From the NCBI RefSeq assembly GCF_031769215.1, contig NW_026781965.1, positions 1,364,001 to 1,428,000 on the forward strand: a DNA stretch of 64,000 bases, written 5' to 3'. Positions 1-45,222 of this stretch are shown in pieces. How positions within the stretch are numbered: position 1 is the first letter of the stretch; each line of letters starts with the position of its first letter. A program made the position numbers and the translations under genes. The notes beneath the pieces are model-generated. The model was given only the letters and a program-made list of their open reading frames with translations, had not been told where the DNA came from and did no database searches. The stretch comes from Ylistrum balloti. Taxonomy: Eukaryota.

Positions 1-3000
1 GTCGATTTCCTGACCTGCCATTGCTTTGAAGGAGGCTTCGGCTGCTTCTACTGTATCAAAATCCACAAACCCAAATCTGAAATTCAAACACAGTCTGTAA
101 TTACAAATCATCATGTGCTTTCCATCTTCAATGATATGTTATCAAAGGAAATATGGATGAAGACCTGTTTCTATTAAATAGAATACTTCATTTCACGAGA
201 CCTTACCATTCCATAAGCGATGATTGTGCAATATCATGAAATATATTATAACTTATCTTAAAATAATATTTTTGCTGCAGAGCATTATTTGTCTACTTTT
301 CAATGTTCAAAACATCATCTATATCCGTAATAGCACAGATAAAATCCAAAGTAAAAATGTATATCCTTAAACATCAGTAAATGTACAAACCCTCTAGATT
401 TGTCAGTATCTGGAAATCTTGCAACTCTTGCTCCTGTGCATCCCTCAAATGCCTCTTGCAAAGTTTCACTGGTGCATGAATACGAAAGATTTTTTACAAA
501 TAAGACTTTCGACTTATCTCCTTCTGCAAAACAAGAAGAAAATACAAACTTTCAGAAATACATATATTTTGTATTATGTACTCTAGATCTCAACTTGGTA
601 TGCAACTTTCTAACTTCTCAAAACAAGTACATTGTGTAACAAGTTTGGCAATAGCTGATGAAATACGAAGGATGTTACATCCTACATAAACTATGATTTA
701 AAAACTGAATACAAACATTCATCAATGTATGCCATCTGACAGGAAAACTGATTTTCAATTTAATGATGTCTTTCATTTCTAACAAGATAATGCTTCACTT
801 CATTATTTTTTTTATAGAGAACTCCATTTAAAGACATCAGCATCCATTCCAATCTGCATATTTCAATCTAATATATACGATTCATTTTCAAAACAATATA
901 TCATAATGTAACCATCAACTGGTCAACTGAAATACTAGTTATTGAAACAAGTATAAACCTACTAAAACAACAAAAACCCTATTATGTAGCTTGCTCCAAC
1001 TTAATTGAAAACACTTTAAATCAGAGTTCAAATTGCTAAAAGTTCCCTTTTTACTGGGTTTTACATCCTCACAACAGTCAAGGTCACAAGCTGGACGATG
1101 TTTAGAGTGACAAAAAGAGTGCATAAGAAAACAATGCAATAGCTGACAGAAAAGAATGGCAAAGGTGAACAATATGGGCAACAAATCTAGTTAGGTCTCC
1201 TCAGTGTCCACTTCGTAAAATGCACAAATTCAAAGGAGACTCACTTTTAGCCAACTCTAACGAGTATTTAGTGGTATAAAACATACCCTATTCTTGAGCT
1301 TTCCTATGACTCCTAAACAAAAAACATCAGGACACTCCCCCCCACCCCAACCCTTCCTCAAGGAGTGCCCCAAAATAAGTGATTTGTGAAAGGTCAAAAA
1401 ATGTGAATGAGAGAAGGTGAAAATGAAGAAGAATCACTAATGATAGCATCAAGAGCTTCATAGCATATTTGTAATGCTTCCTTTTCACCAATGATAAAAC
1501 ATACCTGGACGTCGACCTCCTGGGGATCCAAAGCTATTATTTTGTTTTGGTTTGCCTCCTGCTTTGTCTAAAAACAAAGCATTTCCTTCTAATTCTGCTC
1601 CTTGCTTTTCGGAGAGCATGGTTTCAACTTCATCAGCACTTGAAAATACCACATATGCAAATCTAAAGAGAACAAATAAAAACACATTTTATCAATTTAA
1701 TCACATAATCATTTGAAAAAGAAATTTTGTCAAATTAGCAAGAGTTTACCTCTACAAGAGCCATATCACACAGGATTTATGCATGGAATTAAATGCTTAA
1801 GAAAATGCCAATAATAAATTGCTTTATCCTTAAGCAAAAGTAGATCATTCTACTGAATGAGCCAGCAGCAGGAATAGTCATTTTTCTTTTAGATTTGTTT
1901 GGTGAATACGATTTTTATACAAGACATTGACTCATCTAAACTGATATATATATCCTTGCATGTTAAGAAGTCCTAGAAGAGTAAAAAGTCAGTGCAAGAT
2001 TTACTCTGACTATATCTGTGCTATATTTCTTATGTATTACAAACAAAAACAAGTTCCTACCCTTTGGGAGTACCATCATGTCGCTTTGGCATGCGGACAG
2101 ATGTGGAACCTGTAAAGAACTCTTGTATCACATCCTCTGTGACATTTTCTGCCAAATTCTTCACAAACAAGGTAGTTGCATCTGAATCCCCTGTTTAACA
2201 AAAATGTCATACTTAAGTGGATGAAAAAATTAATCAAATTGTATATTTACAAAGCTGGTGTAGATGTTTCAATACCAACAAATTATATTTGAACAAAATA
2301 CTTGTTTGTAGTGGCAAGTAAATAAAAGCAATTAACCAATGCGAGAATTTTCATGACAAGGGCAAACAATGAAAAATGGATTTAGTCTTCACTTTAATTA
2401 TGGTTAGCAGTTTTTTCAAAGTCATTAAACTCACAAAATTAAACAGTTTTATAATAGCATTGAAAGTTCTTATATAAAGTATGATTTAAGTCAGACTCGA
2501 GATAATGGATTTATTCCCTTCCCCCTCCCCATTCCTCCCAAACAAATAATATATTTAACTGCAAAGCATGGTTAATATCCCTTATACTGTGGCTGTATAT
2601 AACACTATTTCAACATTCTTTGGCATATCATTATCAAGACAAGGTTAGCACCAACTAGAGATTCTGAACAAACTTACCAAAGTCTTTTTTCTGTTTGTTT
2701 GCATCTGATTTTGCCACTGCTACTTTCATGTCTTTCACACCATCTAACTTGAGAGCCTTATCCAGTTGTGATGGGTCAGCCAAATCCACATAAACATACC
2801 TGTGTACAATCAATATATTGATATAGGTTATCTGCTATTTAATCCAGAGTTAGAAATCATGTCAACATGTAATAGTTGTTAGCAGCATTTTGATATAATG
2901 TATTTCAAAAGTGTATCAGCAGATCTAATGGTTTTGAATTTGATTACAAGTTTTATAATGTGTCTCTTTTTAAGATGGTCTTCCAAACAGTAGTAATCTT

Positions 3001-11500: not shown

Positions 11501-14500
11501 GGAGCATTGAAAGGTGAGTAGCATATAAAATAGGATTAACCCTATATATATGTGTGTAAACATATAAAATCTACAGTTATCACACAGTAAATAACTGGCA
11601 TCACAGAGTAAATAAACCAGCTATCACACAGCAAATAACTGGTATCACACAATAAATAAACCAGTTATCACAGCAAATAAACCAGTTATCACACAGTAAA
11701 TAAACCAGTTATCACAGTGCAAATGAACCACTTAAATTATCACACAGCAAATAAACCAGTTATCAAAGAGTAAATAAACCAGTTGTACAGCTAATAAACC
11801 ACTTATCACACAACAAATAATCCAGTTATTATACAGTACTAGGTATCATACAGTACTAGGTATCACACAGCAAATAAACCATTCAAAGTGTTACAGCCCT
11901 TTTTAAACCTAACTGTTATGGACACACACAGTATTGTTGGACATTCATGTACAGATTTATTCAGTACCTATATGAATAGCAAAAACATACAAACATTGAT
12001 GGTTCTGGGTTGCGTGATAACCACAGGTCGATAGAAATACTGATACCTGAACTGCCTTGCAATGATTTATCACTGAACAAAATTAGGAAGTATCTATCCA
12101 GAAATTAGTGAATGCTGGCAATTATATTGACCTACTGACCCAACTATATTGATTTTCAGTTGAAATATAAGCCAATGTTATTTCACCATTATATTGTGCT
12201 TTAATAAGCCCACCTCCTGAATTTGAGTAAGAATTGGTATATTTTGGTCCCATTTGATTATTGCGAAGAAAATATGGTATACAATTTGTTAGTATGCAAT
12301 TGTTGAGTGATTTGATACCATTAGTAATAGGTTATGGTAAGCACATAGTTAATTAGTTCTTGCAGACATTAATGTCAAGTTTCAAGCCTGATATGGTGCT
12401 CCAACTAACATTTTGCATTTATTATGTAAACATTAGTTCTGGAAACATTTTTATTAATAGGTGGAAAGAAAACACCTCTGAAGAAAGCACAAACTCCAAA
12501 TCCTAAGGCGAAAACACCCAAGATGGAAGCAGCCGACCTGAAGACAAAAACTCCAGTTCTTAATCAGAATGGAAAACCTACTACAAAGCAACAAACTCCA
12601 CGTTCAAAAGTGAAAACTCCTGCTAAAGTAGAAACTTCATCCCTGAAGGCAAAAACTCCAAACCCAAACGTAAATACACCTACAGTGCAAACTCCAGCTC
12701 TGAAGACAAAAACACCAGCTAAAAAAACTCCTGCTAAAGTAGAAACTTCATCCCAGAAGGCAAAAACCCCAAACCCAAACGTAAATACACCTACAGTGCA
12801 AACTCCAGCTCTGAAGTCAAAAACACCAGCTAAAAAAACTCCTGCTAAAGTAGAAACTTCATCCCTGAAGGCAAAAACACCAGCTAAAAAAACTCCTGCT
12901 AAAGTGCAAACTCCAGTCCCTACCACAAATGCTCCTGCTAATGTAAAAACTCCAACATTGAAAGGCAAAACGAGTGCAAAAGTGCAAACCCCAATTTCAA
13001 AGACAAAAACACTGGCAACTAAAATGTCAACGAAAGGCAGGACCATGTCTTCAAAACAGAAAATGGAAGTGGAAGATTCTGATGAAAGTGAAGAAAGTGA
13101 TGCAGATATCGATTTGGAAAATATAGGTAAGCTTTGAGGGACACATAAATACATTTTCTCTGATTTTTTTTCTTTGTGAAAGCCAAACTTTGTACAAAGA
13201 ATATTTGGTAATTAGAAACAGCACTTCATTGAAATGAAATATTGTCTTTAAAAATCTACCAGAAGTAAAAAAATTGAAAAAATAAGAGACTTAACCTCCA
13301 TGTTAAGACCAGTTTGATGGTGGTGTCCAGTAGATGAAGGTCTTCCTGAATTGTAGTTCCTCTTTATGAGCAATTGATAAAAAGAAAAAGATTACTGCTA
13401 GACAAAAAATATGTCCTCATTCAAAGTGAATTTAAAATATCCTTCAAATTTATGTTTTGATATGTGTACAGTATAATTCATGACAAGGACATGTAACAGT
13501 AAGTATTTCTCAAGTTTTTGTTGAAAAAAGGAACAAATTTTCAACGAATAATCTTTAAGGATTTTTAAAAGATTAAATTCAGAATTGAAAAAAAAAAACA
13601 CACACACATTATGAGAGTTGTTTTTGCTGGATTTGTAGGATTTAAGTGATCTGTATGAATGAGTACTATGATACATTGACCTGAATGTAGAATGGTACTA
13701 TTTACTTCCCAACAAGACGATAAGTTGATGCCAAATGAAATTGATGTTTCTGCTCTGAATCCTGACTTTGACTAGAGATACCACAATAATTTTATTTTAT
13801 TACAGATTCTGAATGTGATAAGCAGAAGCATAACCTCAAAGTTTGAACTATTTAACAAAAGATTAAAAAGATAAAACATTCTAATTAGATGCATTCCTCC
13901 ATTTACTTTTTTAAAGGCAAAGCAAGACTAGAAGAAGACAATAGTGAAGAAGAGGAAGATGATATAGGTATGTACCACAGATATTAAAACCCTCTTATCT
14001 GTTAGTTTATATTAGTGTCCAATTACTTACCTCAACTAAACCTGAGGACTAAGGTAATCTAAGCACTATCTGTTGGTTCACAAAGGTTTTTTACTTTTGA
14101 CAACTCTTTCAATATACAATATCTACATACCTTCTGGTCTGACACTGGTATTCAACTCTCAGATGTGGGTCTAAAGGACTATTTGGCCTTATTTGGACAA
14201 TGTTGAAAATTTTACCCTTGATCTCTATAGAATGAGATATACATCCAGATATTGAGTGCATGTGTCTTGAAGCTCTAATTGATTAGCTCTACTTTGATTA
14301 TTGCTTTACAGTCTAATAAAACTGCAAGATATAAGAAATACTAGATATAAGTGTATCAATATTTTAATAGGAGTTTCTGAATATCTGCCTCAGCTTGAAA
14401 GTTCCACTTTGATAGTACTAAAATGAAATCGAAATGATAACCCACCTTTTATAGAGATTATATCCGTTCTGTCGGTATGAAGTAAACAGTATCGAGGTCC

Positions 14501-14607
14501 AATTGTTTCATTTTACAATATCGTTCTTTCAAATACAACATAATCAAGGATCAACTAATTTATAAAATTTCTCTTCAAATTAGACATGGAAGATGATGAC
14601 TCCCTCG

Positions 14608-14638
<31 letters not shown>

Positions 14639-17600
14639 AGAGGAGGAAGATGATGATGACGATGATGAAGAGGAGGAGGAAGAAGAAGATGATGATGAAA
14701 AAGAGAAAGATGAAAAGGAAGAGGACAAAGAAAACACAGGTGAAATTAACAGCATCTGCTCATTAAAAAAAAAAGAGCTAGATTGCAGCATATTCCATGG
14801 AAATAGAATGGATACCCAAATCTATAGGGTATTTCCTGAACATATAATAGATATATCCTGACAACGAATTGTCTGTTTTCCCATTAATAAAGTTGCTTTG
14901 TTGTCCATCTTTTCAATAATGCAAACATTTCTGTTCTGTATTAAAGTGTAAATATATGCCCAAGACGAGAGCAGTTAGCATATATCAGCATCGTGATGTA
15001 TCGTGATTAGAAAAGCAGGACAAGGATATTGCGGAAAATTTTAAGATTGGCGATATCGCCACAGACAAAAAGAAGTAAGGACGTGGCTTTTAGATGTATT
15101 AGATTTCTTAATATATTAAATATTATTTTGTCTTTCAGTGCAAGGAAATTCATCTATGAAAAAACAGGATGTGGAAGGGAATGGTAATGGTTTTTGTCAA
15201 ATTGTGATATCACAAAAACAGAAGTCTAAGTGTAAGGTTGTTGATATGTTAGATTTCAAGTCAGTTTGATAGAATTTAGCTGTCACAAATGTCTTCAAGA
15301 CTTAAATGTATCTTGATAGTGTGTTAAACAGAATCTTTTCTTCCCAGATTTCAACATTCTAAGACATGTTTTCTAAATCTCAGCAGAAAGTGAAACTTAA
15401 ATGATATTATGATAATTATCAGCACATCGTGACACGCATATATATATATATATTTTTGTACATTAACTAAATTCACAGTTTGCATTTGATCTGGTGCAAA
15501 CATTAGCTTTTGACCCCTCACTCCCAACAGTATAGATTGACAAGTCTAATTTGTAAGAAAATGTTTTAATTTGTTTTTCAGTTGGGACAAATATGTCTCT
15601 TAAGAAACAGGACATGGATTGGAAAGGTAAATTATTATAGATTGAAAATCTGCTGATACACTGTCATACGTTTTTCTACATGTAATGAATATTTCGCAAA
15701 GATATAAGTAAAAAGTAGAAAATAATCCAGCTCTGTCATAGGTTAAGAAATTGCTTTGTTACAAACTAGTTCTTGGAAATAACTTCTTTTTTTTTCATTT
15801 TCATTTCATTCGATATGTTAACTTTTCCATTACAGTATACTTTCTATGCAACTCATAATAAAATTTGGCTATTTTTAGAGGATCTTGACAATAGGTCATT
15901 GTTTGTGAGAGATTTCCCAACAAAAACAAAGGTGGAAGATCTAAAAATGTTGACAAAAGATGTTTTAGAAGTTTATCCTAAACCACATCTTGGCTGCAAA
16001 AAAGGAAGTTTAAAGTAAGTAAATTATGGTGTCACATATAAATATAACCCTATTACATCAGTGATATGATTGTGTGTGTGTGTGTGTGTGTGCGTGTGTG
16101 TTATGGTTTGCATGTAAATTGTTGTAGTCACAACCCGTCCCTTGCCATGCACTATTTTGAGCCTACAATGACCTCAAACTTGTTATTGTGGGTCAAGCAA
16201 TAGTGCTACATCAATACCGACTCTGATTTTGTAGACATTTTCATGGTGTTTACAAATGAAAGTCAGGTGACAGATGAATTATCGAATGAATTTTCTGATC
16301 CATGGCTGATTCTAAATAGATCATTGACACACAACTGAAAAGTTTCAGAATAAAAGAAGACCTGGGATATTTTATCAACAACTTTAATAATGAATTAATA
16401 CATGGTGATTCGATTCTGAAACATTTAGCATAAATCATAATTATAAATGTATTTGACATGAACACAATGCCATACAACACACCCTCCACACATACACAGT
16501 TGTATGGCACAGTTTTATTATAATGATATGATGAAATTACATCCTTGTACACACACATTGGATACGTATTATTTACAGAGATTGTATGGCACACAGACAT
16601 ATCTATATATGGATCAGTATTTACATATGTTTACCTCCAACATTTTCAGGAAACGAAAATTTTGTGTCAGCATGCCTATTGAAATTTATATAAGGTCATC
16701 AGAACATTTGTAAAAGAGAATTGCTTGAATCTGATGTCATGTGTCATGTTGTCAGTTTTGGTATAATAGAGATGCATCAGTATGTTGATGTGTGTGTGTG
16801 TTTGTGTGTGCGTGCGTGTGTGCGTGCGCGCGCGCACGTTGTAGTCACAGCCCGTCCCTTGCCATGCACTATTTTGAGCCTACAATGACCTCAAACTTGT
16901 TATTGTGGGTCAAGCAATAGTGCTACATCAATACCGACTCTGATTTTGTAGACATTTTCATAGTGTTTACAAATGAAAGTCAGGTGACATACATGTTATA
17001 TGTATATTTCAATTAGGGACATTGAGTAACATATACTCTGTTTTGGTGAAAAATAAGAAAATCCATTTGTTTAACAAAAATATAGTTTCAGACTGTTATA
17101 CAGATCATATGGTATAAAAGACGTGCACATTTTTATTAGGCAATTTAGATAGCTGATTATCTGAAAATGGTGCCTAGACTTATTAAATGGTTTGGATAAG
17201 CAGTTATCTGTATGATAATGTGATTGGATGAGGTGCAACTGATGAGCAGTTAGAATTTGAGTGGCTAATGCACAAAGGTGTGATGTATCTGGTCTCCTAT
17301 CCTGTCAGATAGGTTTACCATAATAACTAGTCAGTGGTGTAATTGTCTTTCTATCAAGACAATATGCAAATGGTAATTTTTGATGTTTAGCTAATGTAAA
17401 GCTTTGTGCTGACATTTCCATTTAAAGTACTGTGTCTTTCCTGAAACGGATGCATCAGTATGTTAATATGATCAAAGTTGCACTATTTTGAGCCTACAGT
17501 GACCTCAAACTTGTTATTGTGGGTCAAGCAATAGTGCTACATCAATACCGACTCTGATTTTGTAGACATTTTCATAGTGTTTACAAATGAAAGTCCGGTA

Positions 17601-20600
17601 ACAGATAGCTGGCATACTCCTTAGCGTACATACAAATTTTCAAGGAGGTACTAAATATTTTCTCTTCATCTGATGCTTCAGTACTTATTAAAATCGTTTT
17701 TCATGTTATGATGTTAATTAATCTTTGCTATTGTCACTTCATGATGTCAAGCAGATGAAAAGTAATAAAGGAAAAAATATGAATATATTTGAAACTTTTG
17801 CAAAACTGTCTGTAGAAAGATACCGCAATCTGTCTGTATTTTTGTGAATATTATTGTGGCATCATGTTGAGAACCAAAGTTAGTCATCTTACAAATATTT
17901 GGCGTTTACACTCTCTCACCACAGCTAAGTCTGTTCTGATAAAGAACAAGGTTTAGACATCTGGTCCTACAATCTTTTGCTTTAATGTATAGTTGTGTTG
18001 TAATGATGTATTGTGAAAGTTGACTGGTTTTCATTGTTAGTGATTGTACCCCACTGTTCCTCAGCTTAGGGGCAGTAAGGTGACAAATATAAGGGCAGTA
18101 AGGTGGCATATATAGGGGCAGTAAGGTGACAAATATAGGGGCAGTAAAGAGACACATATAGGGGCAGTAAGGTGACATATATAGGGACAGTATGGTGACA
18201 TATGTAGGGGCAGTATGGTGACATATATAGGGGCAGTAAGGTGACACATATCGGGGCAGTAAGGTGACATATATAAGGACAGTATGGTGACACATATCGG
18301 GGCAGTAAGGTGACATATATAAAGACATTATGGTGACATATATAGGGGCAGTAAGGTGACACATATAGGGGCAGTAAGGTGATATATATAAGGACATTAT
18401 GGTGACATATATAGGGGCAGTAAGGTGACATATATAGAGGCAGTATGGTGACATATTGTAGCAGTTCAAATCAGAAATGACCTTGGCCCTTATTTATAGT
18501 CACTAGACTAAATTGATTGAATAAAAATGTGGTAGAAACTGTTTCCATTTTGTTGATTATGTTTAGTCTGGAATATTGGCAAGATTATCAAACAATTTGT
18601 TTAAATGAATTTGAATTACCATAGCTCCACATTGAAAATCAGTTCAGTATAGGAGAAAGAAAATGAATGCCAAGTCAATGATACAGTCCTCTTTGGTCTC
18701 TTGTTTATGGTTAATTGTGTTGTAATGCACATGTACATGGAGGAAAATGCCTGTTTTGGTTGAATTTTCTTTTTCCAGATTCTATTAAAGTCACATTTCT
18801 TCTTTCAAACCTTAAATCAGCAGTGTGATTTCTGATCAAACTATTTCCATTTTTTTGAAATTACAGATGGGCCATTTTGCGGTTCAAGAATGAAGAAACT
18901 GCAATAAAAAACCATAAGTTGCTGAATGGAATGAAAATTGAGAATAACAAATTATATGCTGACTTTGTTGGCGCAAAGAGCAAGCATGCCACTAGAACAT
19001 ATAAAAATGGTAAATATTACATGTATGATTAAATTTCTTTCATATTATCAACATTGACTTGCTTCAAACTTGTAAACTATGTTTAAGTGAAAAAATGACA
19101 TGAACTTGTACATAAATTTCTGCGTATGTGTATCCTTGAGGCAAAACTTTTATTTATTGTTTTATAATTTATCAACATTTAACATGATAACAGTATACCT
19201 GTAGTGTTTACTTATCATTAATTAAAAATCAAATTGTATCCTTGAGGCAAAACCTTTTTTTGATTCATCTTATACAAATTTGCTTTAGCCATGAAAACAT
19301 TTCAATGAAGTGTAGATAATTTATGGAAATTTATTAGAGATATTCTACTTTGATATTAAGTATTCATAGTTATACATAGTTGTTGTGTGTTCTTCTATTC
19401 CAGATCCTGTGGATCCTTTATCGTTGTTTATAACTGGATTACCACTTACATGGAAAGAACTTGATCTCAGTAGATTATTTCCAAAAGCGAAATCTGTGCG
19501 TTTTCCTGCAACTAAAAAGCATAAGAAAGGAAAGCGAGATATAACAAATGCTGTAGGGTAAGTGGACATGTTAGTCCTGGAATTTCTATAAACACCATAC
19601 AATTCATGTTTGTAAACTTTAAAAACTACTCTTTAATAAATGTGTTAACTCTCTATGCCATGTGATACATTACTATATAGAATACCTTAGGTATATCGTG
19701 CATGTCGAAAGTTCTTGTTCTGATGAGCACATTATAAGTAATTAGATGGTGGGCAGTTCACATTACCCAGCATTAGAAGGCACTGTGTCTATTCTGAAAA
19801 AAGTTATCACTATTTTTGAGAGATACTTAATGGAACTTTCCTAAATTTCTTGTGAAAGTTCCCGTTGGCCCCTTCTTGTATCCTTTTCATTTTGAGTGTG
19901 ATCATAAAAACAAAATGGATGACAGGTGGCCATCTTGGATGTTGACTATGGAGATTGTTATTGCTGTATCTTGAGAAGCACAGAATGGATCATTCTCAAA
20001 TTTTGATTTGTAGCCTCCTCTTGATCTCTAGTTTTACTCTCTTGATTTTGAGACCATCTGAAAACCAAAATGGCCAAGAGATTGCCTTCTTACATTTTTC
20101 ACGATATTGATATCTTGAAGTATTGGAAGTATTTTTCTTTAATTTTTATTTTGTGGGTTTCACTTGGTCCCTAACGGAGGCGTATAAGGTCAATTTGGAA
20201 ATTTGATCAGGAAAACAAAAAAAGGTCCTAGAGGCCACTATCTTGGCTTCGAGTGTTTAAGATTATTATTGCTATTTCTTCAGAGATATTCTTGAATTTC
20301 ATATAAGGAGCGAAAAGTAGACAAGAACAGAAAAGAAATAACGAGTTTCAATTAATAAAGAAAAAATGGTGGATGCTGAGATCCCTCTGGGATCACTGTT
20401 TGTAAGACAAATCCATGATTACTGACTTAATGTTGGGATCACTGTTTGTAAGACAAATCCATGATTACTGACTAATTGTTGGGATCACTGTTTGTAAGAC
20501 AAATCCATGATTACTGACTAATTGTTGGGGTCACTGTTTGTAAGACAAATCCATGATTACTGACTTAATGTTAGGATCACTGTTTGTAAGACAAATCCAT

Positions 20601-22834
20601 GATTACTGACTTAATGTTGGGATCACTGTTTGTAAGACAAATCCATGATTACTGACTAATTGTTGGGGTCACTGTTTGTAAGACAAATCCATGATTACTG
20701 ACTTAATGTTTGGATCACTGTTTGTAAGACAAATCCATGATTACTGACTTAATGTTAGGATCACTGTTTGTAAGACAAATCCATGATTACTGACTAATTG
20801 TTGGGGTCACTGTTTGTAAGACAAATCCATGATTACTGACTTTTTGTAAGACAAATAATTGTTGGGATCACTGTTTGTAAGACAAATCCATGATTACTGA
20901 CTTAATGTTAGGATCACTGTTTGTAAGACAAATCCATGATTACTGACTAATTGTTGGGATCACTGTTTGTAAGACAAATCCATGATTACTGACTTAATGT
21001 TAGGATCACTGTTTGTAAGACAAATCCATGATTACTGACTTAATGTTAGGATCACTGTTTGTAAGACAAATCCATGATTACTGACTAATTGTTGGGATCA
21101 CTGTTTGTAAGACAAATCCATGATTACTGACTTAATGTTGGGATCACTGTTTGTAAGACAAATCCATGATTACTGACTAATTGTTGGGGTCACTGTTTGT
21201 AAGACAAATCCATGATTACTGACTTAATGTTGGTGTGATTGTGTTCCAGGTATGGATTTGCTGACTTTGCAAGTGAAGCTGAAGCTAAAGCTGCACACGA
21301 TAAAATGCAAGGAAAATCAGTAGAGGGTAAAACACTAGTGATTATGTATGCCTTCAAGAGAGATCCCAAGACTACCAATAAAAGGAACAAAGAGGTGGAC
21401 AGCAGCTTGGATGGTGAGAACAATAATCGCATAATAGTCTAGGGCCACATAGCACACTGACTTACGTTTAGTCAAGGACACTTTCTATAAATAGAATATT
21501 GATATTGTTACTTTCGATAGAAGGTGACATGTAATGGAGTTACTGGGACCTCTATCAGGCCTTTTACTTTTGACGTCAAGTGCCGACTTCGAATGAAACA
21601 CTGATTTCTGAACAGCATATTTATCATAAGATTTGTTTTCAGTCCTTAGACATGAGTATAATTGGTATAAGTAACTGTATTATGACTGGAGTAGAGGGAG
21701 CATTTAGGGGTTAAATCTATGATTATCATATAAACAAGTTTTAATCGCAATATTAGGTGTAATGGTAATACAATAATTTTACGAGATGTGATGCCTACTT
21801 ACTACTTAGCCTTCAACTACTGAGTTGGAGTATAACTTTTAAATCACACCTGAGTGCTGTAGCTTAGATATTTGAATGTAAATGAAGGAAACTGATGAGA
21901 TCAAACTTAGGTCGAATTTTTTAAGTTCAACTGGGTACTGCATTGATACAGGGTTAAATTATGTCTTCATATGTGGGATAGCAAGTGTGTTAAATGTTTA
22001 TATGAGAGACTCATACTGTTTGAAGTAGGTCAAACTTTCTGTATATTGAGGATATGTAAGTTGAAAAGCTTATTGGAGGGAACAAGAGTAATGAACTTGT
22101 CTATATCATATGAAATAACCTACTAATTACGCTGCAAAGTATGAATTTACTGACTTATGATCTTGATCCTCTGAATAGAAATAGGAATAGGGGTAGGGAA
22201 TAGGGAAAGGTCTCCAAATATACAAACATTGTTTAACATCCAAAAAAAAAAATCAAAATCCTGCTGATGGATTCAAAAATATGAATATCATAGTAATTCT
22301 GTAATACAGTCTGTAGCCTGCTTGCAAGTAAGTCAAATATCTCTTGTAATAAGCAACTTACAAAATCGTCAAGATTGAACTAAACACAATAAAATTGATG
22401 GTTTTTTGCATAACAGACTTGAGTATATTGGAACCAAACATCAGTAATGTGAATGCCATTTAGATTGGAGTGCAGTGACCAAATACAAGATATAAATTTA
22501 CTGTCACATACCTGAATGTATTGTAAGTAAGTTATATGAATTTTTCACCAGTTGAGGACTTATTTTTAACAGAAGTACTTTCTTTATTCCTCATTGAAAT
22601 TTCTCCTGAATAAATATTTTATGATTGATCCCAATTTATGAGTGTATGAATCTAGGTTATCATTCAAAGACGAGTTATTCTTGTTCTATACAGCTCCAGC
22701 TGCAAAGAAGGCTAAGTTATCAAAACAGGTAGAAAATGAAGATGATGATGACGACGACGACGATGATGATGATGATGATGATGGTCCAGCAGCCAAGAAA
22801 GCTAAGTTATCAACAAAGCAGGGAGAAAGCGATG
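8598..22834 (+). CDS. Divergent nucleolin-like RNA-binding protein (TP/TPAK repeat region, acidic tracts, 2 RRMs, acidic C-terminal repeats); 3' end lost in the N gap
   Basis: 14 phase-consistent exons: 8598-8627 (MVPKKNSRAK), 10437-10541, 10778-10819, 11483-11513, 12461-13126, 13917-13967, 14584-14739, 15139-15183, 15582-15626, 15879-16014, 18867-19009, 19404-19557, 21250-21413, 22694-22834+, about 636 codons. RRM1: SLFVRDF...KWAILRF...LYADFVGAKS. RRM2: SLFITGL...GYGFADFASE...VEGKTLVIMY. Confidence 0.8.
10080..10248 (-). mobile_element. tRNA-derived SINE with a conserved central domain
   Basis: The minus strand reads an A-box-like AGGCGCAGCAGT, a B box GGGTTCAATTCCTGG (10183-10197), then GGGTTTTCCCTGGGTACTCCACTTTCCTCC, which is the conserved core motif of V/Meta-type SINE superfamilies. 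Confidence 0.75.
11572..11880. repeat. Degenerate minisatellite of about 23 bp (tatcacacagtaaataaaccagt)
   Basis: About 13 diverged tandem units, read directly. Confidence 0.8.
16147..16275 (+). ncRNA. Box H/ACA snoRNA, SNORA50/SNORA76-like, copy 1
   Basis: Hairpin GCACTATT/AATAGTGC with a 12-bp upper stem, H box ACATCA, a second hairpin, and ACA 3 nt from the end. Both pockets lie 14 nt from their box. The 5' pocket pairs with 18S GCTTG-UC-TCAAA. Sense and intronic in a ribosome-biogenesis gene. Confidence 0.85.
16864..16992 (+). ncRNA. Box H/ACA snoRNA, SNORA50/SNORA76-like, copy 2
   Basis: Near-identical to copy 1, with one loop substitution; boxes and pockets intact. Confidence 0.85.
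17478..17606 (+). ncRNA. Box H/ACA snoRNA, SNORA50/SNORA76-like, copy 3
   Basis: Same 129-nt element. Differences are an A-U to G-U stem change, a loop base, the bulged base and the base before ACA; flanks have diverged. Confidence 0.85.
18066..18458. repeat. 23-bp minisatellite (ggggcagtaaggtgacatatata)
   Basis: About 17 tandem units; source of the SPYCPY ORFs in the track. Confidence 0.9.
19900..20260. mobile_element. Interspersed repeat fragment carrying ggccatcttg motifs
   Basis: Shares ggtggccatcttggat-type motifs with 30030-30560; family not identified. Confidence 0.4.
20389..21232. repeat. 46-bp tandem array (gggatcactgtttgtaagacaaatccatgattactgacttaatgtt)
   Basis: About 18 near-identical units ending 17 bp before the splice acceptor of the exon at 21250. 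Confidence 0.95.
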
Positions 22835-23006
22835 NNNNNNNNNNNNNNNNNNNNNNNNNNNNNNNNNNNNNNNNNNNNNNNNNNNNNNNNNNNNNNNNNN
22901 NNNNNNNNNNNNNNNNNNNNNNNNNNNNNNNNNNNNNNNNNNNNNNNNNNNNNNNNNNNNNNNNNNNNNNNNNNNNNNNNNNNNNNNNNNNNNNNNNNNN
23001 NNNNNG
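22835..23006. other. Assembly gap (172 N)
   Basis: A run of n between a low-complexity acidic coding exon and a satellite array. Confidence 1.
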
Positions 23007-23055
23007 AATTGAAAAAAACTGTGATATGGATAGAATGTTTCTATAGGAAGTCATA

Positions 23056-25728
23056 GATTGTTGACAGAGTACAGGAAGGATATATATATGTATGGTAGAT
23101 CTGTTGACAGAGTACAGGAAGGATATATATATGTATGGTAGATCTGTTGTCAGAGTACAGGAAGGATATATGTATGTCTATTGGTAGATCTGTTGACAGA
23201 GTACAGGAAGGATATATATATGTCTATTGGTAGATCTGTTGACAGAGTACAGGAAGGATATATATATGTCTATTGGTAGATCTGTTGACAGAGTACAGGA
23301 AGGATATATATATGTCTATTGGTAGATCTGTTGACAGAGTACAGGAAGGATATATATATGTCTATTGGTAGATCTGTTGACAGAGTACAGGAAGGATATA
23401 TATATGTCTATTGGTAGATTGGTAGATATATATATATTGGTAGACAGAGTACAGGAAGGATATATATATATATGTCAGGAAGGATATATATATTGGTAGA
23501 TCTGTTGACAGAGTACAGGAAGGATATATATATGTCTATTGGTAGATCTGTTGACAGAGTACAGGAAGGATATATATATGTCAGGAAGGATATATATATT
23601 GGTAGATCTGTTGACAGAGTACAGGAAGGATATATGTATGTCTATTGGTAGATCTGTTGACAGAGTACAGGAAGGATATATATATGTCTATTGGTAGATC
23701 TGTTGACAGAGTACAGGAAGACAGAGTACAGGAAGGATATATATATGTCTATTGGTAGATCTGTTGTCAGAGTACAGGAAGGATATATATATGTCTATTG
23801 GTAGATCTGTTGACAGAGTACAGGAAGGATATATATATGTCTATTGGTAGATCTGTTGACAGAGTACAGGAAGGATATATATATGTATGGTAGATCTGTT
23901 GACAGAGTACAGGAAGGATATATATATGTCTATTGGTAGATCTGTTGTCAGAGTACAGGAAGGATATATATATGTATGGTAGATCTGTTGACAGAGTACA
24001 GGAAGGATATATATATGTCTATTGGTAGATCTGTTGACAGAGTACAGGAAGGATATATATATGTCTATTGGTAGATCTGTTGACAGAGTACAGGAAGGAT
24101 ATATATATGTCTATTGGTAGATCTGTTGACAGAGTACAGGAAGGATATATATATGTCTATTGGTAGATCTGTTGTCAGAGTACAGGAAGGATATATATAT
24201 GTCTATTGGTAGATCTGTTGACAGAGTACAGGAAGGATATATATATGTCTATTGGTAGATCTGTTGACAGAGTACAGGAAGGATATATATATGTATGGTA
24301 GATCTGTTGTCAGGGTACAGGAAGGATATATATATGTATGGTAGATCTGTTGACAGAGTACAGGAAGGATATATATATGTATGGTAGATCTGTTGTCAGA
24401 GTACAGGAAGGATATATATATGTATGGTAGATCTGTTGTCAGAGTACAGGAAGGATATATATATGTATGGTAGATCTGTTGACAGAGTACAGGAAGGATA
24501 TATATATGTATGGTAGATCTGTTGACAGAGTACAGGAAGGATATATATATGTATGGTAGATCTGTTGTCAGAGTACAGGAAGGATATATGTATGTCTATT
24601 GGTAGATCTGTTGACAGAGTACAGGAAGGATATATATATGTATGGTAGATCTGTTGACAGAGTACAGGAAGGATATATATATGTATGGTAGATCTGTTGT
24701 CAGAGTACAGGAAGGATATATGTATGTCTATTGGTAGATCTGTTGACAGAGTACAGGAAGGATATATATATGTCTATTGGTAGATCTGTTGTCAGAGTAC
24801 AGGAAGGATATATATATGTCTATTGGTAGATCTGTTGACAGAGTACAGGAAGGATATATATATGTATGGTAGATCTGTTGACAGAGTACAGGAAGGATAT
24901 ATGTATGTCTATTGGTAGATCTGTTGACAGAGTACAGGAAGGATATATATATGTATGGTAGATCTGTTGTCAGAGTACAGGAAGGATATATGTATGTCTA
25001 TTGGTAGATCTGTTGACAGAGTACAGGAAGGATATATATATGTATGGTAGATCTGTTGTCAGAGTACAGGAAGGATATATGTATGTCTATTGGTAGATCT
25101 GTTGACAGAGTACAGGAAGGATATATGTATGTCTATTGGTAGATCTGTTGTCAGAGTACAGGAAGGATATATATATGTCTATTGGTAGATCTGTTGACAG
25201 AGTACAGGAAGGATATATATATGTATGGTAGATCTGTTGTCAGAGTACAGGAAGGATATATATATGTCTATTGGTAGATCTGTTGACAGAGTACAGGAAG
25301 GATATATATATGTCTATTGGTAGATCTGTTGTCAGAGTACAGGAAGGATATATGTATGTCTATTGGTAGATCTGTTGACAGAGTACAGGAAGGATATATG
25401 TATGTCTATTGGTAGATCTGTTGACAGAGTACAGGAAGGATATATATATGTCTATTGGTAGATCTGTTGTCAGAGTACAGGAAGGATATATGTATATATG
25501 ACAGAGTACAGGAAGGATATATATATGTATGGTAGATCTGTTGTCAGAGTACAGGAAGGATATATATATGTCTATTGGTAGATCTGTTGACAGAGTACAG
25601 GAAGGATATATATATGTCTATTGGTAGATCTGTTGTCAGAGTACAGGAAGGATATATATATGTCTATTGGTAGATCTGTTGACAGAGTACAGGAAGAATA
25701 TATATATATGTCTATTGGTAGATCTGTT
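23056..25728. repeat. 46/43-bp satellite array (agatctgttgacagagtacaggaaggatatatatatgtctattggt)
   Basis: About 58-60 units over 2.7 kb with interspersed 43-bp and gtc/gac variants. Confidence 0.97.
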
Positions 25729-26505: not shown

Positions 26506-27045
26506 TTGTTTGTTTATTATCAACAATTATATTTCATCGAGTGGGGTGGAAATACGCAAGTTTCCGTCCTACAATATGAAATATATACATTATTCATAGA
26601 GATACCAGGAATATTGTTTGTTTATTATCAACAATTATATTTCATCGAGTGGGGTGGAAATACGCAAGTTTCCGTCCTACAATATGAAATATATACATTA
26701 TTCATAGAGATACCAGGAATATTGTTTGTTTATTATCAACAATTGTATTTCATCGAGTGGGGTGGAAATACGCAAGTTTCCGTCCTACAATATGAAATAT
26801 ATACATTATTCATAGAGATACCAGGAATATTGTTTGTTTATTATCAACAATTATATTTCATCATGTGGGGTGGAAATACGCAAGTTTCCGTCCTACAATA
26901 TGAAATATATACATTATTCATAGAGATACCAGGAATATTGTTTGTTTATTATCAACAATTGTATTTCATCGAGTGGGGTGGAAATATGCAAGTTTCCGTC
27001 CTACAATATGAAATATATACATTATTTATAGAGATACCAAGAATA
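26506..27045. repeat. 108-bp tandem repeat, about 5 copies
   Basis: ttgtttgtttattatcaac recurs every 108 bp (26506, 26614, ...). It explains the 203-aa repeated ORF. Confidence 0.95.
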
Positions 27046-27886
27046 TTCTATTTATTATACTTTCCTCACACATTTATGCTATTTTTGAATTCCTTAATTC
27101 CAACCAGTTGTTTCTAGTTGTAAAATTGGGAAAAAAATATACATTTTTACTGCAAATACTGTTAACTGATGTCAAAAATTAGTGAAAATATTAAAACTAA
27201 TTTTTATTCAGTGAAAATATCAGTTGAAATATCATATTTTTACTGTGAAACTTTTAACACTGTTTCACAGCAAAACATTAAAATATATTTTTAAAATGTT
27301 TGTGATTAGCAAATACATGAAATCACAGACTTAAATATATCAAATTGTGTGATGAAATTGTTCTTTTACACAGCAAGTTTATGTTAATATGATAGTTAAT
27401 ACAGGTCTCGTTTTATGATGCTGTTCTTGATGGTTAAAGCAGTATCATTGCAGTTTTATTGGTTACTTGTTATCAGATGTTGTACATACAAATGTAATTG
27501 AAAATAAAGAGAATAAAACATCAACATGTAGTTTAATTAATTATAGGTATGCAGTGAACTATATATAGGTGTAATATCAAGAGCCCAGAGGTTTATTTTG
27601 GGGGAGAATTTTGATGTGTAAGATGATAATACTGTATTTCATTACTATTTTATCATGTTGCTTTTACACAAACTAGAAAAATTGTCAACTTTCAACGGCC
27701 ATTTCAGCAACATAAGTTTTTCACTTGCGTTGATGGTAAGATACTTATTGACGTGATGTAGGACTCATTACATTTAAAAGTGTCTTAGAAACAGACATTT
27801 GGTTGTGTGTTTGGTTTGACTGAATGTCAGAAGTCACTTTACACCAGTAATTGCATATAGGTGCAATTTAGTTATAATATCTAAAC

Positions 27887-42600: not shown

Positions 42601-45222
42601 CGTATTGCTTAGATGAAGCAGCCAGTACAAGAAATCCATATACCTAAAATATCAGAATAAGCACAACTGCGCAAGCTCAATATTAACTTTTGATTTTGAA
42701 AAGTTTTGTTTTATTGTTTATATGAATTCATATTTAAGTTATTTTCAATTTTAGAAATAAAGAGACTCCACAGTAGCTTGCATAATGCGATCCGTACTGA
42801 TATAACAAGGAATTTGGATTGCTGCTGAAAACTTGAAAACTTGTTAAATAATCTTTTAAACACTTACGAATGTGCACATTTCTAAAACAAAAATATAAGC
42901 AACATATACGCCAGATGAAGTATTTCTAGAGTCAGTGTAGAAGAAAATTTCAAAATCTTCATTCTAATACTATTCTTGAATAAAATTCAGATGTCGAATA
43001 GAAATGAACACGCATCCGAAGAATTTTAATGGTTTAACACGTGAGATATACTTACAACATATTTGGACCTCTGGGCCACTTTCACTTCAACTTTCACCCG
43101 AGTTTGTCCATAGTAATCCAACAATGATACGAATATCGCACAAACAATGCTTAAGCAGCATATACCTGCAACTAGATGGAAAATACCGACATTTCAATAA
43201 AATCATGCTCGATATCAAACAAGTACAATATGTTCACATAGTAAAGGTGAGTACGACATGGGGCGCCGGAATGGTAAGCGTCTTCTGCTTCCCTGACGAC
43301 ACCAATTCTGAGTATATTACCGAGTATAATCAATGAGTAGCTTGTGTGATCTACAAGAAAATAAATTATTTTTGTCTATGTTTTGTCTCCTATATACCGA
43401 TTAAGCGAATTTTTTGGTAAATATACAACATTCATCAAATTTTCGCTACATTTATTCAATATTGAATACCATCATGAAAATAGTGAATACTACTCCAGAT
43501 ACAGTAAATGTGTATTTCAGGGACAAAAAGATAAATATACCTATCCATAGAGTTGTTGATAAGCCGATCCAGTTGGCAAGGTTGGCAGTAAGGAAAAAAT
43601 TGGAAACATTACCAAGGCGCAGAACAACTACCATTAGGCTAAAGACTACCAATATGTTGTCTGGGAACCAGGAAGCAAGAATTCTGTTCTGAACAACTGA
43701 AAATTTAAACGATTGAAGTTCATTAATTTAATTGATAGAATAATCTCTTTTTTCAATCTACCGAAAGAAGATATATTTTAGAATTTCTATCTGCTATTCA
43801 GATCAGCAAAGGATTTTACCTTATGAAGAACATCTCATCACTAACTACCTTCTGTACGTACTGAGAGCAGGACTTGTTCCTGCCCCAAGGAGTAAACGCC
43901 CACAGAACATAATCGGAAACATAGCTGATGTGAACCTGATCGAATCAATGGTAGACACTGCGAACAAAAGTGTTCCTAAAGACGCTACTGTCGTTGTCAG
44001 GATGGCTGAACCTAAAAGAAAAAGCTCGTTTTTATTAAAGACATAAATTATGTTGATCATGGATTTTTTTTGATATGTTATTAGTAAAAAGTTTTCTTAC
44101 CCCTGTTTCCAATTTTGTCGATGAAATATCCCCCAGGCAAAGCGTTTACTGCATTCCTACAAAAAATCCACATGGCATTTACGTTGTAAGGTATACAGTC
44201 ATAAGAAAATACTTCACATAATACCTGTGTACCAGTATCTTAAGATTCAATCGAATTAAAAACAAATATTTTGTTTGGAGATATCGCTGGATTACTTACA
44301 TCCACGAGTAGGCAGCGTAAAGCTGATTATAGCGATCTGGTCCTAGTCCTAGACAGTCAGGACAGCACGTCATGTTGGCCGTCAGGTTCCTACAATTTTC
44401 AGTCTGTCGGGGAAAAAACCGGATTTCATTGTGTGACGATTATATATTAATATGGTGGTATGTTTTGGTTTAACAAATCCACATCTTTCGTGATCATGGA
44501 CGATTATTGTTATTTAATTAATATCTTTATTTGTAAATAATTATAAATGTTGATGTATCTGGGGAAACAATTATAATGTTTAGAACTTTTAACGGGTCTA
44601 AGGATTGGGTCTAAGGATTGGATAATATCAACTTTTATAAACTTTTACATATCATCTCACTTACGTGAACCCCTTGTAGGTCTTTCTGCAATGCACCTAG
44701 GACATCAATATTGAAGTAGCAGCCAAAGGGAAGAAAACAGGCGAAGACAAGCAGCAAATATCGTGTTTTCCCTACGGTAGGTCAAATCAAAAGTTATTGA
44801 CTTTACTAACATATAAGATTTTATATTATATATTATTCATATTTCATGCCAAAAAACATATCATCTGATATCATTCACGAATTTCCTTCGTGTCAATGAT
44901 ATCAAACTTGTTTTCAAATATTCTAACTGGTTTGATAATTGAATGTTTAAAATGATAATAAAGGTGGAAATTAAAGACATTGTGTTAACACCAGGAACAA
45001 AACATGTGTTATTCTTTGGCATGGAGTCAAAAAGCATCAATTGGAGCACCGTACCTTTAGAAGAAATTTCCAAAAAATTAAACTGGACAAGTTGGACTTA
45101 TTATTCGCACACGGAAGTTTTCACATAGAAAAAAAGTTAATTATAAGTTCATAGGTTTTTTCTTTAGAGGTAGGGTATGAAACACAAGAACTATTCAGAT
45201 ACTTACATTCTGTGACATCCAT
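39680..45222 (-). CDS. MFSD1: MFSD1-like major facilitator superfamily transporter, paralogue A (489 aa, complete)
   Basis: 13 phase-consistent exons: 45207-45222, 44665-44771, 44300-44403, 44101-44156, 43862-44011, 43541-43696, 43056-43165, 42401-42501, 42061-42169, 41158-41298, 40862-41001, 40168-40282, 39680-39844. Motifs RYLLLVFACFLPFGCYFNID, GGYFIDKIGNR, GRLLLGAG and YNGAVYDVSVLISP. Confidence 0.85.
43245..43305 (+). repeat. Copy of an interspersed repeat family (also at about 60900-60965)
   Basis: Exact 18-nt match gtaagcgtcttctgcttc at 43274-43291 and 60933-60950, followed by gacacc in both copies. Confidence 0.6.

What the first reader, a model, noticed from the sequence alone, without database searches (positions are those of the whole stretch)
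1..22834. Head-to-head nucleolin paralogue pair with apparent division of domains
Seen: two genes diverge from ATGs at 7479 and 8598. Both have a 30-nt phase-0 first coding exon (MAPKNVKGKK vs MVPKKNSRAK). Every RRM in both is split by a phase-2 intron at RNP1, with phase-1 introns between RRMs. Gene 1 keeps long acidic blocks and canonical RRMs but few TP sites. Gene 2 has an expanded TP/TPAK array, two degenerate RRMs and an acidic tail. Established: most animals have a single nucleolin with TPXK repeats, acidic blocks, RRMs and a GAR tail in one chain. Inference: an old inverted duplication under a shared promoter, followed by sub- or neofunctionalisation (for example a germline, chromatin or phase-separation variant).
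Basis: partly seen in the sequence, partly recalled or inferred. Interest (0 to 1): 0.7.

Follow-up and report, generated by a model that had tools for sequence, protein, structure and literature searches.

The report
Head-to-head nucleolin family gene pair
A mollusc genome carries a normal nucleolin gene back to back with an old two-RRM, TP-repeat relative of nucleolin (the type called NUCL-1 in worms), and a limpet and a chiton show a similar layout. The pair is real and tidy, but it is family evolution, not a new kind of system.

Summary
Two genes diverge from ATGs at 7479 (minus) and 8598 (plus). Each has a 30-nt phase-0 first coding exon. All five RRMs are split by a phase-2 intron just before RNP1, with phase-1 introns around them.

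Gene 1 is a true nucleolin orthologue of 517 aa: acidic blocks, three RRMs, and a GAR tail plus GKKKTF end that lie 268-867 nt left of the window. Gene 2 (at least 555 aa up to the N gap) has 22 TP sites, an acidic block, two RRMs and a PAAKKAKL/acidic tail.

Gene 2 is not a local duplicate. It belongs to a protostome-wide two-RRM family found in limpet, chiton, snail, cuttlefish, annelid, rotifer, tardigrade and nematodes. The ecdysozoan members have the N-terminal-RGG layout published for C. elegans NUCL-1. Its nearest named kin are nucleolins, and RBM34 never appeared.

The head-to-head layout with an RRM gene recurs in Lottia, where the partner is nucleolin-type, and in a chiton, where the partner is unidentified. 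It is absent in a rotifer and a tardigrade.

No RNA data were available, so gene 2's exon 2, the start sites and co-expression stay untested. The genome holds a third family member on another contig. The scan had noted only the intronic snoRNAs of gene 2 before.

The parts
7450..7479 (-). Gene 1 (nucleolin) coding exon 1, MAPKNVKGKK, phase-0 donor
   Evidence: The N-terminus resembles Mytilus MPPKETKGKK and starfish MAVKNVKK.
3867..6557 (-). Gene 1 exons 2-6 (6557-6441, 6238-6115, 5410-5294, 5055-5035, 4037-3867): alternating basic and acidic blocks. Exon 6 probably ends at a GC-AG intron.
2678..3437 (-). Gene 1 RRM1 in two exons (3437-3326, 2799-2678), phase-2 intron before RNP1
   Evidence: It falls with nucleolin RRM1 at 100/97 support.
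1505..2190 (-). Gene 1 RRM2 in two exons (2190-2061, 1662-1505)
   Evidence: It falls with invertebrate nucleolin RRM2 at 99/86 support.
1..523 (-). Gene 1 RRM3 in two exons (523-391, and 76 to 30 nt beyond the window start). The GAR exon and the last exon lie outside the window, at L002:9577-9732 and L002:9133-9188.
7480..8597 (.). Spacer of 1118 bp between the two start codons. CACGTG at 8555 and 8585. A second CACGTG pair at 7316 and 7350 lies in gene 1 intron 1.
8598..8627 (+). Gene 2 coding exon 1, MVPKKNSRAK, phase-0 donor
   Evidence: The N-terminus resembles Owenia MAPKSAKKFQTPQP and chiton MPQKSRKAMTPQP.
10437..10541 (+). Gene 2 exon 2. The short form ends at 10461 (phase 1). The long form ends at 10541 (phase 0). 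Undecided.
12461..13126 (+). Gene 2 exon 3: K/TP array holding most of the 22 TP and 8 TPxK sites, with a 111-bp unit present 2.4 times at 96% identity, then the start of the acidic region
13917..14739 (+). Gene 2 exons 4 and 5 (13917-13967, 14584-14739): acidic block
15879..19009 (+). Gene 2 RRMa in two exons (15879-16014, 18867-19009). The phase-2 intron before RNP1 holds three H/ACA snoRNA-like copies.
19404..21413 (+). Gene 2 RRMb in two exons (19404-19557, 21250-21413)
22694..22834 (+). Gene 2 tail exon: PAAKKAKL twice, with an acidic run between them. It runs into the N gap.
   Evidence: The same tail occurs in Candidula, and an acidic C-terminus is found in the other family members except Owenia, the spider protein and Steinernema.

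Best explanation
Gene 1 is the orthologue of canonical nucleolin. Its layout is N-terminal basic and acidic blocks, three RRMs, a C-terminal GAR domain and a GKKKTF end.

Gene 2 is the orthologue of a second, ancient branch of the nucleolin family. That branch has a K/TP-rich N-terminus, an acidic block, two RRMs, a K-rich nuclear-localisation-like stretch and an acidic C-terminal tail. Its ecdysozoan members carry an N-terminal RGG domain and match the layout published for C. elegans NUCL-1, a nucleolar protein.

The two genes sit head to head, 1.1 kb apart. A limpet and a chiton also show a divergent RRM-gene partner beside their gene-2 orthologue, so the linkage probably goes back at least to the molluscan ancestor.

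Inferred, not shown: both products act in the nucleolus in ribosome biogenesis. The TP/TPxK array of gene 2 is a CDK-type phosphorylation region, like the N-terminus of vertebrate nucleolin. The two genes are driven together from the spacer, with the CACGTG boxes as growth-regulated (Myc/Max-type) sites.
For: Gene 1. The model has 517 aa, with the GAR exon and the end SAKGSIQNFEGKKKTFSD. Exons are 52-59% identical to annotated Mytilus nucleolins, which also have three RRMs and a GAR. Its RRM1 and RRM2 fall in supported nucleolin RRM1 and RRM2 clades (100/97 and 99/86). RRM3 is nearest to Mytilus nucleolin RRM3 and sat in a 97* nucleolin RRM3/4 clade in the quick tree only.

Gene 2 family. Blast matches over both RRMs to Candidula P0014 (35%), Owenia P0038, Lottia P0083, chiton P0079 and others. 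The Candidula locus shows the same order of TP array, acidic block, split RRMa, split RRMb and PAAKKAKL acidic tail. The family alignment shows conserved motifs. Gene 2's RRMa and RRMb sit in clades of all family RRMa (98/96) and RRMb (100/96) that include tardigrade and nematode members.

Nucleolin kinship.
- Gene 1 against gene 2 aligns in the same order across two RRMs: residues 273-446 against 311-488, E 6.6e-10.
- After its own members, the family profile hits vertebrate nucleolins.
- Against PDB, the profile gives nucleolin 170 bits, then PABP 126, then 77 or less, with RRMa on RBD2.
- The exon 9 query has nucleolin as its best PDB hit.
- The Atlas leads are nucleolin clusters.
- In the tree the gene-2 clade sits next to nucleolin RRM2 (82-93 support).
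- The intron before RNP1 is shared by both families in annotated orthologues. The mouse nucleolin gene also encodes each RBD in two exons, per the title of Bourbon et al. 1988 as cited in PMC2190831.

NUCL-1 layout. [quoted passage not shown] P0093, P0063 and P0127 match this.

Synteny. In Lottia L005 a minus-strand gene with four split RRMs at 1062-7693 faces the gene-2 orthologue at 10001. In chiton L006 a minus-strand RRM gene ending at 9847 faces the orthologue at 10001.

CACGTG boxes. Four of the 10 in the 64-kb window lie within 1.3 kb around the two starts (post hoc Poisson 6e-5). Two lie in the 154-bp chiton spacer.
Against: No RNA evidence exists for either exon chain, for start sites or for co-expression. 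Exon 2 of gene 2 is unresolved.

The library search with exon 9 found no close orthologue above 50% identity.

I could not compare gene 2 with the C. elegans K07H8.10 sequence itself, or with RBM34 or Drosophila modulo, because none could be fetched by reference.

RRM trees rest on about 90 columns, and the deep order is only moderately supported. An AU test does not reject nucleolin-type plus gene-2-type as one clade (p 0.27), but that does not prove it.

The chiton partner could not be shown to be nucleolin-type, because its RRM exons lie outside the fetched locus. The Lottia partner lacks acidic blocks.

Mytilus shows no gene-2 orthologue within 10 kb upstream of nucleolin. The eIF4E gene downstream in Lottia and chiton is not on this contig.

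The E-box count is post hoc, and the window-wide count is not unusual (10 against 5.6 expected; 7 of 100 shuffles reach it).
Confidence: 0.75

Rival explanations
1. A single ancestral nucleolin was duplicated in inverted orientation within this lineage (bivalves or molluscs). The copies then divided its modules: TP repeats went to gene 2, and GAR and most RRMs went to gene 1.
For: The genes are head to head, share the same intron phases and start with matching 30-nt first exons. TP sites are concentrated in gene 2 and RG in gene 1.
Against: Orthologues of gene 2 with the same layout exist in an annelid, a rotifer, a tardigrade and nematodes, and they cluster with it with high support. Gene 1 and gene 2 are only 24% identical over the RRMs. 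Nucleolins of Mytilus and a starfish also have few TP sites.
Confidence: 0.08
2. Gene 2 belongs to another two-RRM nucleolar family such as RBM34/Nop12, and merely lies next to nucleolin.
For: RBM34 also has two RRMs with K-rich flanks (own knowledge). RRM-only similarity is weak evidence of kinship.
Against: No RBM34 appears among the listed hits, among the Atlas leads, or among the best 60 PDB chains for the family profile, where nucleolin leads by 45 bits. The RNP1-splitting intron and the same-order match to nucleolin RBD2-RBD3 fit nucleolin.
Confidence: 0.07
3. The gene 2 chain merges two genes: a TP/acidic protein (8598-14739) and a separate two-RRM protein (15879-22834).
For: There is no RNA support. 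Introns are long and repeat-filled, and the exon 2 to exon 3 junction is uncertain.
Against: All junctions from exon 3 to exon 10 keep phase, and the frame stays open. Annotated full-length proteins of Lottia, chiton, cuttlefish and Owenia carry the TP/K-rich N-terminus, the acidic block and both RRMs in one chain. The Candidula locus has the same order.
Confidence: 0.05
4. The adjacency is chance or secondary: two nucleolar RRM genes brought together independently, without a shared regulatory unit.
For: It is absent in the rotifer and tardigrade and not seen within 10 kb in Mytilus. Downstream synteny (eIF4E) is not kept here. The chiton partner is unidentified.
Against: The same divergent layout with an RRM gene occurs in three molluscan genomes, with spacers of 0.15-2.3 kb. 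The Lottia partner has nucleolin-type split RRMs.
Confidence: 0.15

Closest known systems
Vertebrate nucleolin (NCL)
   Same: Gene 1 has N-terminal basic and acidic blocks, tandem RRMs each encoded by two exons, a C-terminal GAR and a GKK..F[DE] end. Its RRMs cluster with NCL RRM1, RRM2 and RRM3/4.
   Different: Gene 1 has three RRMs instead of four and almost no TPxK sites (0, against 8 in chicken). Gene 2 shares the acidic block, TPxK sites and RRM kinship, but has two RRMs, no GAR and an acidic C-terminal tail.
C. elegans NUCL-1 (K07H8.10) and the ecdysozoan 'rearranged nucleolin' (PMC9633708)
   Same: [quoted passage not shown]
   Different: Gene 2 and the other lophotrochozoan members examined have a K/TP-rich N-terminus instead of an RG/RGG domain (0 RG). 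K07H8.10 itself was not compared. Here the type coexists with a canonical nucleolin.
Yeast Nsr1 / S. pombe Gar2 and plant nucleolins (two RRMs)
   Same: Acidic N-terminal region followed by two RRMs (own knowledge).
   Different: Those proteins end in a GAR domain, while gene 2 ends in an acidic tail. They were not compared here.
RBM34 / Nop12
   Same: Two RRMs flanked by K-rich regions, nucleolar (own knowledge).
   Different: It never appeared among the hits of the gene-2 family. No direct comparison was possible.
Bidirectional (head-to-head) gene pairs of co-regulated housekeeping genes
   Same: Divergent starts 1.1 kb apart, functionally related products, and shared motif pairs near both starts.
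   Different: Promoter sharing is not shown. The spacer is not a CpG island (33% GC).

Membership tests
Nucleolin (canonical NCL type): gene 1 | N-terminal alternating basic and long acidic stretches | tested here: met
   Acidic runs of 17, 22 and 29 residues separated by K-rich stretches.
Nucleolin (canonical NCL type): gene 1 | Central array of tandem RRMs that are orthologous to nucleolin RBDs | tested here: met
   Three RRMs. RRM1 and RRM2 cluster with nucleolin RRM1 and RRM2 and with Mytilus nucleolin at 100/97 and 99/86. RRM3 clusters with nucleolin RRM3/4 only in the quick tree (97*). Three RRMs rather than four, as in Mytilus.
Nucleolin (canonical NCL type): gene 1 | C-terminal glycine/arginine-rich (GAR/RGG) domain | tested here: met
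   A 52-codon RGG exon at L002:9577-9732, outside the window.
Nucleolin (canonical NCL type): gene 1 | Each RBD encoded by two exons | tested here: met
   A phase-2 intron before RNP1 in all three RRMs. Same in Mytilus. Title of Bourbon et al. 1988.
Nucleolin (canonical NCL type): gene 1 | Nucleolar localisation and a role in pre-rRNA processing | not testable with these tools
   No expression or localisation data.
Nucleolin (canonical NCL type): gene 2 | C-terminal GAR domain | tested here: not met
   No RG dipeptide in the 555 residues up to the gap, and no RGG-coding frame anywhere in the window. Most orthologues end in an acidic tail. The 171-nt N gap is unread.
Two-RRM nucleolin-like family (NUCL-1 type): gene 2 | Two tandem RRMs with the family's motifs (LF.K.LP ... 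YAFLEF ... VDYVG.KS; DPLKLYV.G ... GYAFV.F ... YAKK) | tested here: met
   Gene 2 RRMa and RRMb fall in the family's RRMa (98/96) and RRMb (100/96) clades. Motifs. RNP1 of RRMa is diverged (WAILRF).
Two-RRM nucleolin-like family (NUCL-1 type): gene 2 | Acidic block upstream of the RRMs, and a K-rich stretch plus acidic tail at the C-terminus | tested here: met
   The end of the tail is hidden by the N gap.
Two-RRM nucleolin-like family (NUCL-1 type): gene 2 | N-terminal RG/RGG domain (as published for NUCL-1) | tested here: not met
   0 RG in gene 2. The lophotrochozoan members examined lack it, while the tardigrade and nematode members have it (PMC9633708).
Two-RRM nucleolin-like family (NUCL-1 type): gene 2 | Direct sequence kinship with C. 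elegans K07H8.10 | not tested
   The sequence could not be fetched by reference. The link rests on rhabditid proteins P0093 and P0063, which have the published layout.
RBM34 / Nop12: gene 2 | RRMs closest to RBM34 RRMs | tested here: inconclusive
   No RBM34 among the listed hits, but no RBM34 sequence was in the tree.

The most novel reading that the evidence does not exclude
The ecdysozoan NUCL-1-type protein is not a domain-shuffled nucleolin. It is the survivor of an ancient pair, canonical nucleolin plus a two-RRM sister gene, that arose by inverted tandem duplication. Molluscs still keep both genes physically coupled under one growth-regulated bidirectional promoter, more than 500 million years later.
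Probability: 0.35. Interest if true: 0.55.

Novelty: new member of a known kind. Interest (0 to 1): 0.38.

Why it matters
Both genes are ordinary members of the nucleolin family, and automatic annotation already calls the chiton orthologue of gene 2 'nucleolin-like'.

Two points are of modest value.

1. Molluscs carry the canonical type and the two-RRM type side by side. This suggests that the worm NUCL-1 type is a separate old paralogue, not a rearranged nucleolin as PMC9633708 describes it. If so, the view of which protein is 'the' nucleolin of ecdysozoans would change.

2. A divergent pair kept across molluscan classes would be a handy natural case for studying co-regulation of nucleolar genes, and how TP-phosphorylation, acidic and GAR modules are spread over paralogues.

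Neither point is a surprise to a specialist, and both still need RNA data and wider sampling.

Tried and rejected
RNA evidence. The only public run holding this stretch (X1) is a DNA run of another individual. It confirmed order and contiguity but gave no splice joints.

Rfam. Nothing at gathering score in the window or in L002. At the E-value threshold there were only weak H/ACA hits in gene 2 intron 6, and no U20/U23/U82-like RNAs in gene 1.

Big library search with gene 2 exon 9. It found no close orthologue and no record of this gene's own product, only distant family members.

Own-genome searches with gene 2 exons found only the gene itself.

Synteny. In the Candidula locus a retroelement lies upstream. 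In Mytilus nothing turned up within 10 kb.

Pfam on the Lottia and chiton neighbour pieces gave only RRM_1.

eIF4E, which lies downstream in Lottia and chiton, is not on this contig.

Literature. No paper on a molluscan nucleolin pair. The supplements of PMC9633708 hold no mollusc data. A search for a paper on Myc E-boxes in the nucleolin intron gave no usable passage, so that point rests on my own knowledge.

The placement of the Lottia partner's third RRM inside the gene-2 clade is not robust (AU p 0.39 for the clade without it).

Procedure. The joined (spliced) proteins were never sent to any database tool, so database searches with the joined models were left out. Only single exons by reference and proteins returned by the tools were searched. 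The joined models were used only inside scripts, for local BLAST, HMM and trees. The N gap was not filled. No contig looked human.

Full report
**Where and what.** The window is G000:C108:1364001-1428000 of a 648.5-Mb genome with 33% GC. The best protein matches of gene 1 are Mytilus nucleolins, at 52-59% identity per exon. The organism is therefore a mollusc, probably a bivalve other than a mussel. Its name is hidden.

**Checking the observation.** On the minus strand, ATG 7479 opens MAPKNVKGKK followed by gtaagt. On the plus strand, ATG 8598 opens MVPKKNSRAK followed by gtaatc. I listed stop-free stretches on both strands and then all AG and GT sites with their phases.

The gene 1 chain:
- It is 7479-7450, 6557-6441, 6238-6115, 5410-5294, 5055-5035, 4037-3867, 3437-3326, 2799-2678, 2190-2061, 1662-1505, 523-391, and 76 to 30 nt beyond the window start.
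- Two further exons lie in the upstream DNA that I fetched: the GAR exon at L002:9577-9732 and the last exon at L002:9133-9188.
- The result is an open 1554-nt CDS of 517 aa.
- The donor after 3867 is GCAAGT, a GC-AG intron. This model fits the Mytilus protein better than the GT alternative at 3834.

The gene 2 chain:
- It is 8598-8627, 10437-10461, 12461-13126, 13917-13967, 14584-14739, 15879-16014, 18867-19009, 19404-19557, 21250-21413 and 22694-22834.
- It is open for 555 codons up to the N gap at 22835-23005.
- Exon 2 is the weak point. The good donor at 10541 is phase 0, but the strong acceptor at 12461 is phase 1. Either a weaker donor at 10461 is used, or a weak acceptor at 12469 is. 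Comparison with orthologues does not decide between them.

Half-RRM exons give weak but correctly placed RRM_1 matches.

No RNA run holds this stretch. The one public run that does is DNA of another individual. Its contigs cover 7300-13299 in the same order.

**What gene 1 is.** It has every structural mark of nucleolin:
- basic and acidic blocks at the N-terminus;
- RRMs that cluster with nucleolin domains: RRM1 and RRM2 at 100/97 and 99/86, and RRM3 nearest to Mytilus RRM3, in a 97* RRM3/4 clade only in the quick tree;
- a GAR domain, and the end ...EGKKKTFSD, like AGKKKTFDD in Mytilus and QGKKIKFE in chicken.

Mytilus nucleolins also have three RRMs.

**What gene 2 is.** The exhaustive library search with exon 9 (second half of RRMb plus linker) found no close orthologue. 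It did find distant two-RRM proteins. Local BLAST of my model against those showed matches over both RRMs to a snail fragment (P0014, Candidula), an annelid protein (P0038, Owenia) and unnamed transcripts.

A profile of nine such proteins then found Lottia P0083, chiton P0079 (annotated 'nucleolin-like'), cuttlefish P0085, rotifer P0099, tardigrade P0127 and nematode P0093. Directly below those came hundreds of vertebrate nucleolins.

The family has a fixed layout:
- a short M-x-P-K start;
- a K/TP-rich stretch;
- an acidic block;
- RRMa (LF.K.LP ... YAFLEF ... VDYVG.KS);
- a short linker;
- RRMb (DPLKLYV.G ... GYAFV.F ... YAKK);
- a K-rich stretch;
- in most members, an acidic tail that ends the protein.

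The Candidula locus shows the same exon order, including an exon EPAAKKAKL plus acidic run that matches gene 2's last visible exon. In annotated orthologues the exon borders fall right before RNP1 in both RRMs.

The tardigrade and nematode members start with an RGG domain. [quoted passage not shown] I could not fetch K07H8.10 itself, so this link rests on layout and on two rhabditid proteins.

**Is gene 2 a nucleolin relative?** Several lines of evidence agree:
- Gene 1 and gene 2 align in the same order over two RRMs, at 24% identity and E 6.6e-10.
- The family profile against all PDB sequences puts nucleolin first at 170 bits. PABP follows at 126 and everything else is at 77 or less. RRMa aligns on RBD2 and the pair aligns on RBD2-RBD3.
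- The exon 9 query alone also has nucleolin as its best PDB hit.
- The protein atlas leads are nucleolin clusters, though with scores under 0.9, so they are leads only.

I built a maximum-likelihood tree of 95 RRM domains: nucleolins of vertebrates, amphioxus, starfish and Mytilus, the Lottia partner, this genome's genes, 18 family members and 15 outgroup domains. In it, all family RRMa form one clade (98/96) and all RRMb another (100/96). The two together form a clade (100/96) that sits next to nucleolin RRM2, with backbone support of 82-93.

AU tests do not reject nucleolin-type plus gene-2-type as one group (p 0.27), nor the gene-2 RRMs alone as one clade (p 0.39). With about 90 columns these trees are only a guide.

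But no RBM34 sequence could be put in the tree, so it is unlikely rather than excluded.

**Is the head-to-head layout old?**
- Lottia: the gene-2 orthologue starts at L005:10001. A minus-strand 709-aa RRM gene ends at 7693. I rebuilt its four RRMs from the DNA. Each is split by a phase-2 intron before RNP1. Its first, second and fourth RRMs fall with nucleolin RRM1, RRM2 and the mollusc RRM3 group. It has a short RGG stretch but no acidic block.
- Chiton: a minus-strand 903-aa RRM gene (first exon MPRGARKKKPV) ends 154 bp from the orthologue's start. Its RRM exons lie outside the fetched DNA, so its type is unknown.
- Rotifer and tardigrade: the neighbours are unrelated genes.
- Mytilus: nothing similar within 10 kb upstream of nucleolin.

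So the pair probably dates to early molluscs. Whether it marks the original duplication is open.

**Regulation (inferred).** Four of the window's ten CACGTG boxes lie near the two starts. Two are 13-43 nt before gene 2's ATG, and two are in gene 1's first intron. The chiton spacer has two boxes, the Lottia spacer has one, and both Mytilus nucleolin genes have one about 140 nt after the gene start. From my own knowledge, vertebrate nucleolin is a Myc target with E-boxes in intron 1. The parallel is suggestive, but the count here is post hoc.

Gene 2's first RRM intron holds three H/ACA snoRNA-like copies (Rfam SNORA46/SNORA50 at 35-40 bits, below gathering). This fits a highly expressed gene linked to ribosome biogenesis.

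**Other family members.** A third gene on contig C316 has two nucleolin-type RRMs with the same split and a GAR tail. It has no acidic or TP region nearby. 'One nucleolin split in two' is therefore too simple for this genome.

**Verdict.** It is wrong in age and mechanism: this is not a recent division of one gene's domains. The finding is a new member of a known kind. Its modest extra is that molluscs keep both the canonical type and the NUCL-1 type.

- Joined protein models were built from coordinates inside scripts only and were never sent to a database tool, so database searches with the joined models were left out.
- The N gap was left as it is.

Noticed in passing
G000:C316:1822430-1828320 (L012/L013), plus strand: A third nucleolin-family gene. 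It has two RRMs (RRM2-like and RRM3-like, 44-67% identical to gene 1 exons) with the same phase-2 split before RNP1, plus a GAR tail with RDYGS repeats. No acidic block or TP array within 30 kb.
   Followed up: partly
window 16148-16275, 16865-16992, 17479-17606 (+): Three copies of an H/ACA snoRNA-like element in the intron that splits RRMa of gene 2. Rfam SNORA46/SNORA50 matches at 35-40 bits, below gathering. Already noted by the scan (s1-258807).
   Followed up: partly
window 20388-21233: A 46-bp satellite (about 18 copies, 93-94% alike) fills the intron of RRMb and ends 17 nt before the acceptor of exon 9 at 21250.
   Followed up: no
window 23054-25728 and 26506-27047: A 46-bp satellite of 59 copies with strong G-over-C skew starts right after the N gap at the end of gene 2. 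A 108-bp repeat of 5 copies follows.
   Followed up: no
window 18067-18456: A 23-bp satellite of 17 copies in gene 2 intron 6. It is open in several minus-strand frames (PYCPYICH... ORFs), which is an ORF artefact.
   Followed up: no
window 3862-3867 (minus strand): Probable GC-AG intron in gene 1 (donor GCAAGT after 3867). The GT alternative at 3834 adds 11 residues that Mytilus nucleolin lacks.
   Followed up: partly
window 12613-12882: The TP array holds a 111-bp (37-codon) unit 2.4 times at 96% identity, which indicates recent in-frame growth. The Candidula orthologue has a 545-codon open exon of GQTPxQQK repeats (L004:7085-8719).
   Followed up: partly
L005:1062-7693 (Lottia, minus strand): The nucleolin-type partner in Lottia has four split RRMs, no acidic block, a short RGG and two GLPxSFTG motifs at its end. 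Its third RRM falls weakly with the gene-2-type RRMs, which could mean shared descent or exchange between the neighbours.
   Followed up: partly
window 7300-13299 against run X1: A DNA run of another individual differs at about 40 single bases and at six indels (up to 17 nt, all non-coding) in 6 kb. None of the indels lies in an exon.
   Followed up: no
window 43455-44096 and 54608-55220 (minus strand): Two similar sets of membrane-protein exons (for example ...LRLGNVSNFFLTANLA... and ...LRVGNVSNFLLTANIA...). This looks like a tandem pair of MFS-type transporter genes. The scan's note s1-258933 calls one of them MFSD1-like.
   Followed up: no
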